64,000 nucleotides of DNA. Source: Heteronotia binoei (lineage: Eukaryota). The stretch is taken from positions 23,498,001 to 23,562,000 of the forward strand of contig NC_083237.1 in assembly GCF_032191835.1 (NCBI RefSeq). Reading direction: 5' to 3'. Below the pieces are notes generated by a model. It was not told the DNA's origin, made no database searches, and saw only the letters and a program-made list of their open reading frames with translations. Position numbers and translations under genes: made by a program. Positions 52,373 to 63,400 of this stretch are shown here, piece after piece. Every line of letters starts with the position of its first letter. Within the stretch, counting starts at the first letter, position 1.

Positions 52373-52741
<369 letters not shown>

Positions 52742-52901
52742 TTATTACCACCCTCTTTCCTCCGCCAGTTTTCCTTTTAGCAAGATGGAAGGCCTGGCTC
52801 TTGCAGGCCAGGCGCTGCTTTGCTTCCCAGAAGAAACCACCTCGCCCCACCGGACCACACTCTTTCCCCAGGAAACCCACAGAATGTGGATGTGGACTTA
52901 C

Positions 52902-52997
52902 CAGAATGAGGACCTTGCCAAGGCAGACGAAAGGGGTGCTGAGTTCAGCCATTAGCATGCAGCCCAGGAAGAAGTCGCCTTTGCCCTGGCGCCAGAG
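52902..52997 (-). CDS. TLCD3B: TLCD3B exon 4 (LWRQGKGDFFLGCMLMAELSTPFVCLGKVLIL)
   Basis: ctgcag acceptor, gtaagt donor, TLC motif E.STPF. Confidence 0.96.
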
Positions 52998-53117
52998 CTG
53001 CAGTGGAAGACATGGGAGAGGAGTGACCTTTCTGGGGAGTGGCTTCCAAGGACAGAGCGCCTCCCACCTCATGACCCATGCCTTCCCAGCGGCTCCCCAC
53101 TCACCACAGACACTCAC

Positions 53118-53349
53118 CACAGACACAGGGAAGCAAACCAGCACCATGAAGAGGTGATGGACCACCATGAGGAACTCCTTGTGTAAGTAGGTGCGGGTGA
53201 CGGTGCGCAGCGATCGTTTCCCAACTGCCCCTGAGGCTGCCTCGTGCCCCTTGACCCGGTACTTGTGCCAGTGGCACATGAACATGGCATAGATGTCGTA
53301 GATGAAGTAGGGAACAGCAAACTGTGTGTAGGTTGCTGTCAGCCAGTGC
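53118..53349 (-). CDS. TLCD3B: TLCD3B exon 3 (HWLTATYTQFAVPYFIYDIYAMF...KEFLMVVHHLFMVLVCFPVSV)
   Basis: ttgcag acceptor, gtgagt donor, TLC HH motif. Confidence 0.95.
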
Positions 53350-56096: not shown

Positions 56097-56577
56097 ATGC
56101 CTTGGATAGGCCAATAAGCCTTCGCGGCTACAGTTACCTTGCCCTGCTCCCAACAGCGCCCCCGTAGGGAGCCCTCTTCACAGGCAGCATTCCTTTCCTC
56201 TACCCCACCCCTTGCCCTAATAGCCTCTATGCAGGACAGAAACAGCAGGATGCTTTCTCACACAGACAAGCCACTGGCCCCCCTAGCGCCTCCTGCAGGC
56301 GAAACCAGTGCACTGCCCAGCAGCTTCCTCTTCCCAATATCGAACTGCCCTACCCTCTGCTGCACATCTGCCTTTGACATGTCACTGTCATCCAGTTCTA
56401 AATTTGGTGCCCGTCCCAGTGTGGGTGTCAGGTTTCTCACTAGTGTGACCTTGCCAACACACTGCTGGGATGGATACTGAAACCCAAGGTTTGGAAAGGG
56501 CGGGTGCGGCGAGGGGGAATGGGACAGAGGCACTGCACTGCAGCGTTGCCCTGGCATGTAGGCAAAGGCTGACTTAC

Positions 56578-56661
56578 TGGTCGTTGATAATGTGCTTGCA
56601 GGACGAGGAGACGATGTAGCCGACTGTAGAAGCCATGATGGCCTGCACAGAGGACACCAGC
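56578..56661 (-). CDS. TLCD3B: TLCD3B exon 2 (LVSSVQAIMASTVGYIVSSSCKHIIND)
   Basis: ctacag acceptor, gtaagt donor, phases 2/2. Confidence 0.95.
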
Positions 56662-57340: not shown

Positions 57341-57977
57341 TAAAGTTCACACGCTTCAGTTTGTGGCCCCAAATATCCCAGGCAAAAGGAAAACCTACGG
57401 GGGTAATGGCTAGCATTGGTTGTCCTCATAGGTGAGTGGCAACTTATCATCCTGGTCCGGCCCCTGCTCAACCCTTTGCTGTAAATTAATAAGCCTCAAT
57501 CTCTCCCAGAGGACTCGGGAGTTCTGGCTCACAGCCCCACTGTAATCCACCAGACCATACTTGCCCAGAGAATCGAGAGCTCCCTGGCTTCTGGCCTCTC
57601 CTGACTTGTTAGTAACCCTTAAAAGGCCAAACAAACAGTGAGGAGGAGCAGTTTGCAGCATGCTGTACCCCACTCCGATCAGACCCTGGAGATCCCGGCC
57701 CCCGGCCTCTTCTCCTTCTTGGACCCACCGAGCCTCGTTATGGCAAGCGACTTCACAGCCCTTCCTCTTTACTGCAACATACACCACTCCCCTTTCCGAG
57801 GAGTCTCAACTGCCATCCCCTTTGCCAGAGCCCCAGGAAAGGGCTGCTTTCTCCCCTTCCCCTCTGAAACAACAAAGAGGATTCCTACCCTCCCCCTACA
57901 CCTGAGGCCTGCTGACCACCCGCCCGCCCGCTGCTCCTGGATCCTGGGCTGCGTCTTTTCTCTGCATCCCTGGTTAC

Positions 57978-58102
57978 CTGGCGGAGACGATGACCGCGTC
58001 GGCCTCCTCCCATCGCAGCCACGGCAGCCACTTGAGGCCGTTCTTGGACAACAAGAAAAGGCCAGGGAAGACAATGCCCCCTGCTATCAAGGCGTGAAAC
58101 AT
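57978..58102 (-). CDS. TLCD3B: TLCD3B exon 1a (MFHALIAGGIVFPGLFLLSKNGLKWLPWLRWEEADAVIVSAR)
   Basis: Matches the recalled FAM57B N-terminus; AG|gtaacc donor; absent from the ORF track. Confidence 0.93.
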
Positions 58103-59127
58103 CTCGCTTCAGGCTGCAGGGTTGGGGAGGGGAGGGGGGGCAGCGCAGATGGGGAGGGTCAGCGGGGCCACCCTCGGGGAAGGCTCATGGTTCTCTGAGG
58201 GGGGTGAGGGGGGATGGAGAGGGAAGGGGGGGATGGCGGCGTGGCGGGTTGGTCCCAAGCAGAGCTGCTGTGACAGACAGAGAGAGAGACAGAGCCGAGG
58301 GAGGGAGGGAGGGAGGGGGAGCGGGGGAGCAGCTGTCAGCACAGTGCGGGAGGAACTTAAAGAGACAGCGGCCTGGGGTGTGCAGGCAGCGGCAGGACTG
58401 GCAAAGTGGGCTGGATCAGCTGGGAGAGTAGTAAAAGCTGAGGACACGGCACAGCGAGGGGGCTGTGGGTCAGGGCTGAAATGCATTGTGGGGGAGGAAG
58501 AGAAAGGGAGGGGGGAGGGCCTGGTTGCAGGTCGAGGCTCAGCACGGTGGATAGATAGTGAATCAAATCGGAGCGGGTGGGTAGGAGGGAGGTCAGGGCT
58601 TGGGACTGCAATGAAATCAAGCCATTCTGACACTTAAAAATCCTCCCTCCCGGAGTTTCCCTGACCTGAAAGCTTTGCCTGTTTTAAATGGGAAGCAGCA
58701 GCTAATCAGACTGGGGAGGTCTCACCTGCTCTACAGCCATCTAACCGGGGAACAGAATTTAACTCTCAATGCTGGGGCATAATTCCTCCCCCCAACAATC
58801 TGTAAACCCCATCTTGCTGGGCAGGATGATTTGCCTAATCCCATAATCTGAGCCTAGTTTGTGAAGATCAGGTCAGTGTTATGCTGGAGAAGAGGTTTAA
58901 TGATGGTGGGGTGGAGAAGCACAGTTAACCCTTTCCTTCCTGTGTATTAGGGCTAATCCTCCAATAAAACTCCACCTGCTGAGCAGGTGACCCTGATGTG
59001 ACCTTTGATAGCTGGGGTGGGACAGAGGGTAGAAACTAAAGCAACAGTGACACCTTTTGGTTAAATATAAAAACTGCAACACGGTGGCTGCACAAAGTTT
59101 ACCCTGCTTTTAAACCCAAGGGGCAGC

Positions 59128-59484
59128 CGTGTTGGTCTGAAGCAGCTGAACAAAGCAGGATTCAAGTTGCATCTTTAAGACCAACAAAGTTTTATTCAGA
59201 ATGTAAGCTTTCATGTGCTCTCTCAGCCCCACCCACCTCACAGGGTGTCTGTTGTGGGGGAAGGAGATAAAGGAGATTGTAAGCCGTTCTGAGTCTCTGA
59301 TTCAGAGAGAAGAGCGGGGTATAAATCTGTATTCTTCCTCTTCTTCTAAAAGGACACGGGGATCAGGTACACAGTATACCCCTCGTCCGAAGAAGAGTGC
59401 TTTTAGCACATGAAAGCTTACATTCTGAATAAAACTTTGTTGGTCTTAAAGGTGATACTTGACTCCTGCTTTGTTCAACTACTT
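59128..59484. mobile_element. Palindromic Penelope-like element with a SINE 3' half (59220-59347) in the loop
   Basis: 80-bp inverted arms 59140-59219 and 59405-59484. Confidence 0.7.
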
Positions 59485-59544: not shown

Positions 59545-59663
59545 CTGGCAGATACGTAGACTGCATTGACTTCTTCGATTTTTCCAAAGTTAGTCAGAGA
59601 AAAACGCAGCATCCAGAAAAGCCAAGAATAGGTGAGTAAACCCAGGATGAATAAACTGTGTAC
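59545..59663 (-). CDS. TLCD3B: TLCD3B alternative N-terminal exon 1b (VHSLFILGLLTYSWLFWMLRFSLTNFGKIEEVNAVYVSAR)
   Basis: Open frame; ends EEVNAVYVSAR like exon 1a EEADAVIVSAR; same phase-2 AG|gtgaga donor; polypyrimidine ...ttgttag acceptor upstream. Confidence 0.75.
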
Positions 59664-60498
59664 CTAACAAAAGGGAAAGAATGGTACAAATTAAGAGATT
59701 CGCATTGCTCTATTGTCCCTCTAATCAGCCCTACTTCCTAGTTATGTATCTAGTCTTTTATTATAGTCAAATTCAGGGGTCATTTTGTAGATAAAGAGGT
59801 GCCAGAGCTCATTAGCACAATTCATTTGCATAACTTATTTGCATATGCCACACACACCCTGACATCATAAGGTATACTACATGATCTCAGCTCTGCATCT
59901 ACCTGAAAATGCTTCTTGAATTACAATTGTCATAATAAAACCTTACTCCCATCATACTTTTAAAAATTACTTTTCCCTATGTGGCCACAGTGGCATGACG
60001 AAGATTTCCATTTGTCTGCTTGATATGTTTTGGTTATTTCCCCATTTTTTGTGGTGGAAATATTAGAAAGTTTGTCAAATCCTAGAATTCAGCAAAATTC
60101 TCACAGGGGGTTTGAACAATGGAGCCCAGAAGCAGGTATGGGGCGGGGAGGGTAAGAAAGAAATAGAACAATAAAATTTAGAGGTTCTGGAGCTCTGCTC
60201 CTGTGAGCTCCTGCTCAAAATGAGGCCTGGTCAAATTTATGGAAGAGAGACCTGAGGTTGTTACCCTTGATAGTAAATGGAATTTCCATGAATTGAAGAA
60301 ACCATCTTTTGAGAACCTGATGCTGGGGACAAACTATAATAACCATGCTGTATTTTAAATCTTCCAAAAACTTCTTGACTAGAAACAGGATGCTGAACTA
60401 GACAGCTCTTTGACATGACATGATTTTTTAAAAAGAAAAACTCAATCAATTGTAAACAAAGTTTATTTTTCGGTAAATTGATTTTTAAAAGTCTTTTA

Positions 60499-60772: not shown

Positions 60773-62299
60773 TTAAACTCACAGTTCCAGGAGTTTTGGA
60801 TGCTATCACTATGGTTCTTGAGGTATTCTTTCCTGAGCTGTATTGCTAACCCCACATCTACTATTGGGCAAAAACTGAAACCTGATTTGCTTCAAAAAGA
60901 GTAATGTGAATACTTTTCAATGGTACCAGAATCAACAATGAATGAATTTGCTTATAGTAGCTCTCAGTCAATCAACCTACCTGTTCCACAGTCATCGTAA
61001 TGTATAGCATAGGGGGTCAATTACACCAGGGCTGTCCTGTGCATCTGCCTCTATGGAGGGTTTGGTAAGCTGGGGAGAGATCTTTCCCTAAGGAAATTAA
61101 GATGTAATTGAGACCTCTGCAGATATTCTGCTTTAACAACAGCAAAGTGACCAAATCCAAATGATACAATCAATTAGTTCCTCAGAAAGGTAATAACTGA
61201 GGCACACACAAAACAACTCAGATATCATAATAAATATATGCAGGCATCTTTCTCGATACATTCTTTTAACATTTCAGTTCAATAGCACATCAAAATCAAA
61301 TGCCTAAATAATTAGTATTAGATATGCTAATACACTAATATATAAGCATTTCTTAAGATTAATTCATCAACTGAGAACACTACATGTAATTTTTTGTTCT
61401 AACAGCTTTATGTTCAAACAAAGAGTACATTTGTGAAACCAAAGAATTTGGGCATGTACATCTGTGCTGCATTGTGGACATTTGTAGGTCTCTGCAGACT
61501 TGTCTTGCAAGAAAGTGCATCCATGGTAATTAGTACTTTCAGTAACACATAAAAGCATTACTCAAGATGCAAAAAAAAGCTGTTGAAGTGTTTGCTTCTA
61601 AATGGCAAATGAAGAATTACTTTGTAAAGATGTATATTTACTTACTAAATTATGACCATTTTGGGACAATCACTGCGGAGAACAAAGTTAATTGTACCCA
61701 ATTAGCTGTCAGGATGGACCTGGCTGTGAACTAAACTGCAGCTGGTTAATATATTGAAATCTTGGCAGCTAAAAAAAATAACTTTATTCATTTAAAAGAT
61801 ATTCTCCCTTTTTGGCTTGTGCATTCAGTAGCTTAATACAACATGCACATAAATTTTATATGCAGTCATATCATATAAACTACATTAGTTTAAAACACGT
61901 GGCTAGACAAAGGCCACATCCAGTCACAAAAATTGTTTTAGGGAGAAATACCCCAAGCCTGACAACAAAGGAATCAGTTTTCCCCAAAAACAATCCCTTC
62001 TAAATAAAAACGAAGAGGAACATTGTCGATGAATTGGGAGGAGGGAAGAGGCATTTTGCGTAAATTAAACATTAGTTTAGTTTTGAAGAATCTGGATGAA
62101 GTAAAGCGAACTTTTTTTTTTAAAAAAATTGATATTAGCTCGAATGGCACATTATCTAAAATGGTGCTTTAATAACATTTCTCTCTGTGGTCAATTTGAA
62201 TAAATCTGCATGCAGAAACTTTTGCCCTCTCCCCTCCCATGGAATTAATTAAAGGGGTGTTTCTTAATATAGTTAAACTATTACAGAATATATCTGCAC

Positions 62300-63400
62300 G
62301 CTATGTGAATTAACTGCCTGTAATTCTCTCGCTTCTCGACCGTTGCGGAGAGAAAACGAGAGATTCCTGGTTTCCATGACAACGGCACCCCATAACCGTG
62401 CGTGCAAAGGAGCACTGCGCGCATGTGCAGCGCTGCAGCCCGGCTTCGATCTCCGTCCCCTCTCGTAGGCGCACGCAGTTGCGCGAACCGCGAGTGAGTA
62501 AACGAACGAGGCGCATGCGCACTAAACAGAAGACACGGGCCTCCCGAAACTCCCGTGAACTTTGCCGCACGACGGGTTTCCCCTTCCCCAAACTCTGATT
62601 GGTTGCGGCAATGAGCCAATGGCGTTTGCTTTGAAATAATCTCGTTGCTAGGTAGATTGTTTTGCTCGAGCCCTGGTTTGTGTAACGGGATGTGGGAGGT
62701 TAAAGCCTGACAGATAATATTTAGGCTCACGATGATAAAGGGCAGAGAGCTCGAGATAGAGCAATAGAGAAATTAACGGCCGGCAGTTATCTCTACAGAA
62801 GGGGAGGGGCACGGTTTAAGAGCCCGCAGTCTCGATTGGGCTCTGTCCCCTCTTTCTATGGATAAGAGAGCCTCCTTAGTGAGGTCTCTTCGGGTGCAGG
62901 CGCCGCATTTCCGGTGGAAAGCGAGTACTGAGGCGGGGGAGGGACGACAGCGCTGCACTCCGGCCAACGCTGCTCGGGCTCTTGTGAGGTGACGTAAAGC
63001 ACTTCCGCTGGTCCTCCGCACCTTTCCGGTCGGCTAGGAATGTGACTTCCGCGGAATGATACCAGCGTATAAGTGAATTTTGGGCGCTAAACTGCCCCGT
63101 AGTGCCATTTCCGGCTATTGCCGAGGTCTCCAAGGCAACGGTGGGACGCATAGGCCTGAGACGCTCGGACCGTGTGGCTATGAATCGGAGGGATATATAT
63201 TCCGGAGGGTGGAGTTCCCGCCCCTGATGGCCGTTAATACAGTTGCGTGGCCGATGAGTAGTATTCACGGGGCTTCTGGCTCCTTCGGTATTGGCAGGAA
63301 GCTACTCCAGGGATGCTCTTTGTGCAGCTGTGGGAAAAGGGGATTGAGGGACGTCTCCCCCAAATTAAGCTTCGTTTCATAAAGAAAACATGAGTTATCC
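62300..63400. promoter_or_regulatory. CpG island, likely a bidirectional promoter (NRF1, ETS, CCAAT, RFX X-boxes)
   Basis: GCGCATGCGCA 62511-62521; several (T)TTCCG ETS-like motifs at 62.9-63.1 kb; GTTTCCATGACAAC 62370-62383; GTCTCCAAGGCAAC 63126-63139. Confidence 0.75.

What the first reader, a model, noticed from the sequence alone, without database searches (positions are those of the whole stretch)
59545..59663. Hidden paralogous N-terminal exon of TLCD3B lacking its expected start codon
Seen: a hydrophobic 40-codon exon ending in the same EE..AV.VSAR motif and phase as exon 1a, 1.4 kb upstream of it. It aligns with my recollection of a mammalian alternative N-terminus (MALLFLLG...F..LR..L.N...EAVLVASK). 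Where Met is expected there is GTA, directly after a strong acceptor whose TAG is an in-frame stop. Inference: an ancient exon duplication gives swappable first TM segments. Here translation needs an upstream phase-0 exon, perhaps from the 62.3-kb island, or starts at the internal Met (MLRFS...) and drops the TM helix.
Basis: partly seen in the sequence, partly recalled or inferred. Interest (0 to 1): 0.7.

Follow-up and report, generated by a model that had tools for sequence, protein, structure and literature searches.

The report
Annotated alternative N-terminal exon of TLCD3B
The flagged stretch is a real alternative coding exon of the lipid-metabolism gene TLCD3B in Bynoe's gecko, but public gene models already include it, joined to a small upstream exon that supplies the missing start codon, so it is ordinary.

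Summary
Minus-strand 59663-59545 is a 119-nt open exon with an AG acceptor, an in-frame TAG just upstream, no ATG at its 5' end, and a GT donor in the same phase as exon 1a, which lies 1.4 kb downstream.

It is not hidden. The window is Heteronotia binoei. RefSeq "ceramide synthase isoform X1" (XP_060111518.1/XP_060111519.1, 292 aa) maps residue for residue onto the window. Its N-terminus is a 10-codon coding part of an upstream exon (61010-60981, peptide MLYITMTVEQ, phase-0 donor), then the flagged exon, then exon 2.

The same two-exon N-terminus is modelled in at least 12 other squamates. Turtle, alligator and mammal models have the same exon starting with Met.

Profile comparison supports an old duplication of exon 1a (97% probability, E 1e-11, all 42 columns).

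That exon lies at 61.0 kb, not in the 62.3-kb island.

Exon 1b evolves much faster than exon 1a, with pairwise dN/dS of 0.35-1.1 against 0-0.2. It has stayed open and free of indels in all five squamate genomes read.

No RNA reads could be obtained, so use of the exon in this gecko rests on the gene model and on conservation. Verdict: already known, low interest.

The parts
59545..59663 (-). Exon 1b of TLCD3B (the flagged exon). It is 119 nt: 39 codons plus 2 bases. It encodes residues 11-50 of isoform X1, that is the first hydrophobic helix, a short loop and the start of the next helix.
   Evidence: 100% map of P0133; orthologues
59664..59666 (-). TAG that serves both as the AG acceptor of exon 1b and as an in-frame stop that closes the frame upstream. 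It is preceded by a pyrimidine tract.
   Evidence: the acceptor position is conserved in Gekko, Tiliqua and Varanus
60981..61010 (-). Coding part of upstream exon 0: the 10 codons MLYITMTVEQ, ending in phase 0 at the donor CAG|GTAGGT (GT at 60980-60979). The second ATG (60995-60993) is the one conserved in other squamates.
   Evidence: exon 0 peptides of other squamates
61017..61019 (-). In-frame TGA two codons upstream of the first ATG of exon 0. It fixes the start of the open frame.
61040..61175 (-). Non-coding block just upstream of exon 0, conserved in Gekko, Tiliqua and Varanus and containing TAATTA/TAATTG cores. It is a candidate promoter or 5'UTR of the X1 transcript (inferred).
57978..58102 (-). 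Exon 1a, the canonical first coding exon (isoform X2, starting MFHALIAGG...). It is 125 nt, ends in the same phase as 1b, and lies in a GC-rich island (0.62-0.66 GC at 57.85-58.6 kb).
   Evidence: a transcript contig of a related gecko runs straight through its 5' flank
56577..56661 (-). Exon 2, the common acceptor for exons 1a and 1b. Its first G completes the split Arg codon.
52373..53348 (-). The three remaining coding exons: 53348-53118, 52997-52902, and 52690-52376 followed by the stop codon.

Best explanation
The flagged stretch is the second coding exon of the alternative-promoter isoform of TLCD3B (RefSeq 'ceramide synthase isoform X1') of Heteronotia binoei. Transcripts that begin upstream carry a short exon 0 (coding part 61010-60981). 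It provides the ATG and 5-10 residues in phase 0. Exon 0 splices to exon 1b (59663-59545), which splices to exon 2 in place of exon 1a. The canonical isoform X2 starts at exon 1a, which has its own GC-rich promoter inside the 1b-to-2 intron. Exons 1a and 1b are old tandem duplicates of equal phase, so the two proteins differ only in the segment before the TLC domain: the first membrane helix and the loop. In turtle, alligator and mammal models exon 1b carries its own ATG. All squamates examined have lost that ATG and rely on an ATG in exon 0. Shown here: the sequence anatomy, the identity to the database model, the orthology, the paralogy, and conservation of frame and splice sites. Inferred: actual splicing and translation in this gecko, which of the two ATGs is used, the location of the upstream promoter, and any functional difference between the isoforms.
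For: P0133 (H. binoei isoform X1, 292 aa) and P0135 (X2, 284 aa) both map at 100% onto window exons with canonical splice sites. The exon 0 region and its donor are conserved with Varanus, Tiliqua and Gekko. In the Varanus model the equivalent exon lies 1.5 kb upstream of 1b. The two-exon N-terminus is present in models of Paroedura, Podarcis (three species), Lacerta, Ahaetulla, Pantherophis, Hemicordylus, Sceloporus, Anolis, Pogona and Varanus. It is also readable in Notechis, Tiliqua and Gekko DNA. Exon 1b is exactly 40 codons with no indel or stop in five squamate genomes, while the flanking intron alignment is full of gaps. Over two independent species pairs, synonymous changes exceed non-synonymous ones (odds ratio 2.4, Fisher p = 0.009). 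The 1b profile matches the 1a profile at hhalign probability 97.4%, E 9.7e-12, across 42/42 columns. The Pfam TLC domain starts at residue 48 of X1 and residue 40 of X2, which is at the last three residues of either exon. Turtle and rodent have an acceptor plus ATG at the 5' end of 1b. Papers treat mammalian TLCD3B isoform 2 as a functionally distinct protein (PMC7270532; PMC12588548).
Against: There is no direct transcript evidence for this gecko. No RNA run was listed, and no transcript-derived protein with this N-terminus turned up. Most support comes from computed gene models, which can be propagated by homology from one species to the next. Exon 1b is only weakly constrained: pairwise dN/dS is 0.35-1.1, against 0-0.2 for exon 1a. 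The first ATG of exon 0 (61010) is not conserved even in Gekko kuhli. The AlphaFold model is poor overall (mean pLDDT 55).
Confidence: 0.82

Rival explanations
1. The exon is a decaying relic. After losing its ATG, exon 1b is no longer translated in squamates, and the X1 models are artefacts of ab initio or homology-driven prediction.
For: dN/dS is high, with several pairs near 1. No RNA support could be obtained here. Exon-to-flank identity between the window and Gekko is only modestly raised.
Against: The exon has 40 codons with no stop or indel in geckos, skink, monitor and snake. The acceptor and donor are conserved. An upstream exon with an in-frame ATG and a phase-0 donor is retained in every lineage. 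Pooled independent pairs show an excess of synonymous change (p = 0.009). The C-terminal motif AVYVSAR and the LFILGL core are nearly invariant.
Confidence: 0.08
2. The exon is spliced in, but translation starts at an internal Met (WMLRFS, residue 28 of X1). That would give a protein lacking the first membrane helix. Alternatively the transcript is mainly regulatory, for example through an upstream ORF or nonsense-mediated decay.
For: Some snake models start at an internal Met near the end of the exon (Pantherophis X1 and Erythrolamprus, MEFCFAVY...). Exon 0 can also meet an acceptor 11 nt before the exon 1a ATG, as modelled in Gekko kuhli. In this gecko that junction would give only a short upstream ORF.
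Against: Residue 28 is Met only in geckos. The other internal Met (QME) is Ile in this species. The region upstream of it keeps its hydrophobic helix character and its frame in all squamates. Both exon 0 ATGs precede it on the mRNA, and the second has a purine at -3.
Confidence: 0.07
3. The upstream coding exon comes from the CpG island at 62.3-63.2 kb.
For: Two RefSeq transcripts encode the same X1 protein. A further non-coding 5' exon, possibly from the island, therefore cannot be excluded.
Against: The frame is closed by TGA at 61019-61017, just upstream of the exon 0 ATG, so no coding sequence can come from further upstream. In Varanus, Gekko and turtle a small gene on the opposite strand lies beyond this island. 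That fits the island being the promoter of that gene.
Confidence: 0.03

Closest known systems
RefSeq XP_060111518.1 / XP_060111519.1, ceramide synthase (TLCD3B) isoform X1, Heteronotia binoei
   Same: Identical. All 292 residues map onto the window's exons, including the flagged exon and exon 0.
   Different: Nothing in the sequence differs. I could not see how much transcript support the model has.
Mammalian TLCD3B/FAM57B alternative N-terminal isoform (MALLFLLGC...EAVLVASK; e.g. rat B1WBX0, P0040). Papers call a variant 'isoform 2', TLCD3B2/FAM57B2, the proposed effector of 24R,25-dihydroxyvitamin D3.
   Same: It is the orthologous exon: same position upstream of exon 1a, same phase, same splice into exon 2, and a hydrophobic helix followed by the A-V-x-V-x-[SA]-[RK] end.
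   Different: Mammals, turtles and alligator have the ATG at the 5' end of the exon and 42 codons. Squamates have 40 codons, no ATG, and start in exon 0. That 'isoform 2' of the papers is exactly this N-terminus rests on my memory of UniProt, not on a tool result.
Squamate isoform X1 models (Anolis H9GLM3/XP_008115347.1, Pogona XP_020654479.1, Varanus XP_044303624.1, Podarcis, Lacerta, Sceloporus, Hemicordylus, Paroedura, Ahaetulla, Pantherophis)
   Same: They share the two-exon N-terminus: a short exon 0 peptide ending ...RM(A/V)E.Q, then the 40-codon exon 1b.
   Different: Geckos have a shortened exon 0 coding part of 5-10 codons, against 15-24 elsewhere, because of small indels.

Membership tests
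TLCD3B exon 1b (alternative N-terminal exon) | Lies upstream of exon 1a in the TLCD3B locus, on the same strand, in conserved gene order | tested here: met
   Collinear blastn hits with the Varanus, Tiliqua, Gekko and Notechis loci; exon map
TLCD3B exon 1b (alternative N-terminal exon) | Sequence homology to exon 1b of other amniotes | tested here: met
   tblastn E 1e-14 to 3e-6 against squamate loci; alignment with turtle, alligator and mammal exons
TLCD3B exon 1b (alternative N-terminal exon) | Donor in the same phase as exon 1a, compatible with exon 2 | tested here: met
   Both exons end with AG|GT after codon position 2
TLCD3B exon 1b (alternative N-terminal exon) | Initiator ATG at the 5' end of the exon, as in mammals, turtles and alligator | tested here: not met
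   GTA in this gecko, and CTA, TTT, TTT in Gekko, Tiliqua and Varanus. The start is supplied by exon 0 instead.
TLCD3B exon 1b (alternative N-terminal exon) | Spliced into mRNA in this species | not testable with these tools
No transcript-derived protein was found.
Tandem exon duplicate of exon 1a | End-to-end similarity between the 1a and 1b profiles | tested here: met
   hhalign probability 97.4%, E 9.7e-12, 42/42 columns. Caveat: both are short hydrophobic segments.
TLC domain protein (Pfam PF03798) | The isoform containing the exon scores above the Pfam gathering threshold | tested here: met
   P0133 scores 107 bits against a cut-off of 24.6, with the domain at residues 48-261

The most novel reading that the evidence does not exclude
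In the squamate ancestor the start codon of the alternative TLCD3B isoform moved from exon 1b into the upstream exon 0. That added a lineage-specific N-terminal extension of 5-24 residues, while the first-helix exon drifted fast. This would be a clade-wide start-codon relocation in the isoform that mammalian work links to vitamin D metabolite signalling. It appears not to have been described in a paper.
Probability: 0.55. Interest if true: 0.25.

Novelty: already known. Interest (0 to 1): 0.15.

Why it matters
It matters little. The exon and its upstream partner are already in the public gene models for this species and for a dozen other squamates. The alternative N-terminus is also a known feature of mammalian TLCD3B. 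The one modest addition is comparative. Exon 1b is an internal exon in every amniote examined. Squamates have lost its ATG and depend on exon 0. The exon evolves several times faster than its paralogue 1a. This could guide anyone testing whether the two first helices give TLCD3B different localisation or partners.

Tried and rejected
1. RNA evidence. I gave look-up of sequencing runs a 9-kb, mostly intronic stretch. No RNA run was listed, probably because a holder needs a twentieth of the words. This was a planning error on my part.

2. A local search for the Pogona and Varanus exon 0 peptides in the window gave only background scores. The exon was found instead by DNA synteny with Varanus.

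3. A word search with the Varanus N-terminus found only Varanus and Pogona, because the other X1 isoforms sit inside 90% clusters represented by the 1a form. The listing of cluster members recovered them.

4. A word search with residues 1-78 of P0133, aimed at short transcript fragments, returned only ORFs around exon 2.

5. Look-ups of P0002, P0006, P0085 and P0063 found no contig on record.

6. Martineau et al. 2018 (PMC6063485) is not held, and no held paper gave the isoform sequences.

7. The AlphaFold model from an 18-row alignment was poor overall (mean pLDDT 55). I use only its N-terminal helix-loop-helix, at pLDDT 70-90.

8. I did not run the large representative search, because the claim does not rest on absence of relatives.

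9. I sent no exon model that I had joined myself to any search tool. The spliced protein was handled only through the database entry P0133.

Full report
**What is in the sequence.**
- On the minus strand, 59663-59545 reads as 39 codons plus two bases, from VHSLFILGLL... to ...EEVNAVYVSA.
- It is preceded by a pyrimidine tract and TAG|G. That TAG is in frame, so the frame cannot be extended upstream within the exon.
- The first codon is GTA.
- The exon ends CAG|GTGAGA with the Arg codon split after its second base.
- The canonical first coding exon, 1a (58102-57978), ends in the same way with ...EEADAVIVSA + AG|GT.
- Exon 2 begins at 56661 with the G that completes Arg.

**Species and existing annotation.**
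- A word search with an open stretch covering two downstream TLCD3B exons returned TLCD3B/FAM57B ("ceramide synthase") proteins from many vertebrates. Their N-termini fall into a 1a type and a second type.
- Listing the clusters gave two RefSeq proteins of Heteronotia binoei: isoform X1 (P0133, XP_060111518.1/XP_060111519.1, 292 aa) and isoform X2 (P0135, 284 aa).
- Both map onto the window at 100% identity with canonical splice sites.
- X2 runs exon 1a, exon 2, then 53348-53118, 52997-52902 and 52690-52376.
- X1 replaces exon 1a with two exons: 61010-60981 (MLYITMTVEQ) and the flagged 59663-59545.
- The window is therefore Bynoe's gecko. Another note of this scan names the same species. The exon is already part of a public gene model, so it is not hidden.

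**The upstream exon.**
- I had located this exon before finding that model. The Varanus komodoensis model (P0010) has 19 extra residues from an exon 1.5 kb upstream of its exon 1b.
- The Varanus locus is collinear with the window. The aligned region in the window (61175-60975) keeps the donor CAG|GTAGGT.
- In frame with that donor the window reads TGA, two codons, then ATG (61010), then four codons, then a second ATG (60995), then TVEQ.
- Gekko kuhli and Tiliqua share only the second ATG, giving MTLEQ and MALQQ.
- Toxicoferan and lacertid models have longer peptides of the form M..SF(I/L)T..A.F.RM(A/V)E.Q. Their internal Met corresponds to the gecko's second ATG.
- The second ATG also has the better context, with a purine at -3.
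- Which ATG is used remains open.
- That exon is at 61.0 kb, not in the 62.3-kb island. The TGA at 61019-61017 rules out coding input from further upstream.
- In Varanus, Gekko and a turtle a small gene on the opposite strand lies beyond that island.

**How widespread it is.**
- The two-exon N-terminus is modelled in Paroedura, three Podarcis species, Lacerta, Ahaetulla, Pantherophis, Hemicordylus, Sceloporus, Anolis, Pogona and Varanus.
- I could also read both exons in genomic DNA of Notechis, Tiliqua and Gekko kuhli, where they are not in the main model.
- Turtles (Pangshura, Pelodiscus), alligator and several mammals have the orthologous exon with 42 codons and a Met at its start.
- In Pangshura a pyrimidine tract and CAG directly precede that ATG. 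In the rodent Perognathus a tract and CAG lie 6 nt before it.
- So exon 1b is an internal exon across amniotes. What is special to squamates is the loss of its ATG and the reliance on exon 0.

**Paralogy.** A profile of 17 exon 1b peptides against a profile of 14 exon 1a peptides gives hhalign probability 97.4% and E 9.7e-12, aligned over all 42 columns. Shared features are FP..F in the helix and AV.V.A(R/K) at the end. Both are short hydrophobic segments, so the E-value may flatter the match. Equal length, equal phase and tandem position point the same way.

**Constraint.**
- In five squamate genomes exon 1b is exactly 40 codons, with no stop or indel. The intron alignment just upstream is full of gaps.
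- Pairwise dN/dS is 0.35-1.1 for exon 1b, against 0-0.2 for exon 1a.
- Pooling the two independent pairs (Heteronotia-Gekko and Varanus-Notechis), synonymous differences are 2.4-fold enriched (Fisher p = 0.009).
- The exon is thus constrained, but weakly. Strong conservation is limited to the LFILGL core and the NAVYVSAR end.

**What it encodes.**
- Pfam places the TLC domain from residue 48 of X1 and residue 40 of X2. That is from the last three residues of either alternative exon.
- The hydropathy peak in X1 starts at residue 11.
- An AlphaFold model from an 18-row alignment is poor overall (pLDDT 55). It gives a helix at residues 2-35, a loop at 36-40 and a helix from residue 41, with pLDDT 70-90 over residues 11-50.
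- The two isoforms therefore differ in the pre-TLC membrane helix and loop.
- A transcript contig from a related gecko runs unspliced through the 5' flank of exon 1a. This fits exon 1a having its own promoter in the GC-rich island at 58.0-58.6 kb.
- The likely mechanism is alternative promoter use: an upstream promoter giving exon 0 > 1b > 2, and an internal promoter giving 1a > 2. This is inferred, not shown.
- Papers treat mammalian "isoform 2" as functionally distinct: it is the proposed effector of 24R,25-dihydroxyvitamin D3 that makes lactosylceramide (PMC7270532; PMC12588548). That this isoform is the 1b form is from my memory only.

**What is missing.**
No reads could be laid.
- No transcript-derived protein with this N-terminus was found.
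- Splicing and translation in this gecko therefore rest on a computed model plus conservation.
- I sent no exon model joined by me to any search tool. The spliced protein was examined only through the database entry P0133.

**Verdict.** It is wrong about the exon being hidden and about where the upstream exon lies. The feature is already known, and interest is low.

Noticed in passing
window 59140-59219 and 59405-59484: Inverted repeat with 80-nt arms, 93% complementary and 185 nt apart, in the intron 60-400 nt downstream of the exon 1b donor. Similar pieces occur elsewhere in the Gekko kuhli locus, so these are probably two copies of a dispersed repeat in opposite orientation. They could form a long stem in the pre-mRNA next to the alternative exon.
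   Followed up: partly
window 61040-61175 (minus strand): Non-coding block just upstream of exon 0, conserved with Gekko, Tiliqua and Varanus. It includes a near-invariant stretch around TCAATTACATCTTAATT...CCTTAGGGAAAGATCTCT with homeodomain-like TAATTA cores. It is a candidate promoter or enhancer of the alternative isoform.
   Followed up: partly
window 58103-58113 (minus strand): A CTGCAG| acceptor lies 11 nt before the exon 1a ATG. The Gekko kuhli submitter model joins exon 0 to the equivalent site, which is 12 nt before the ATG there and in frame, giving MTLEQPEAE-MFHAL. In this gecko the same junction would be out of frame and would give only a short upstream ORF.
   Followed up: partly
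window 62300-63250: This CpG-rich island has short blocks conserved with Varanus. The island is probably that gene's promoter rather than a TLCD3B exon.
   Followed up: partly
L006 14170-15210 (Pangshura tecta, TLCD3B intron): A motif of about 30 nt matching window 57509-57538 is repeated about 20 times at roughly 49-nt spacing in the turtle intron. It is a tandem array absent from the gecko.
   Followed up: no
P0164 (Lerista edwardsae) and P0085/P0162 (Pantherophis, Erythrolamprus): Inconsistent gene models. The Lerista model reads exon 0, 1b and 1a in series, giving 334 aa. Some snake models start at the internal Met near the end of exon 1b. This shows the region is modelled unevenly across squamates.
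   Followed up: no
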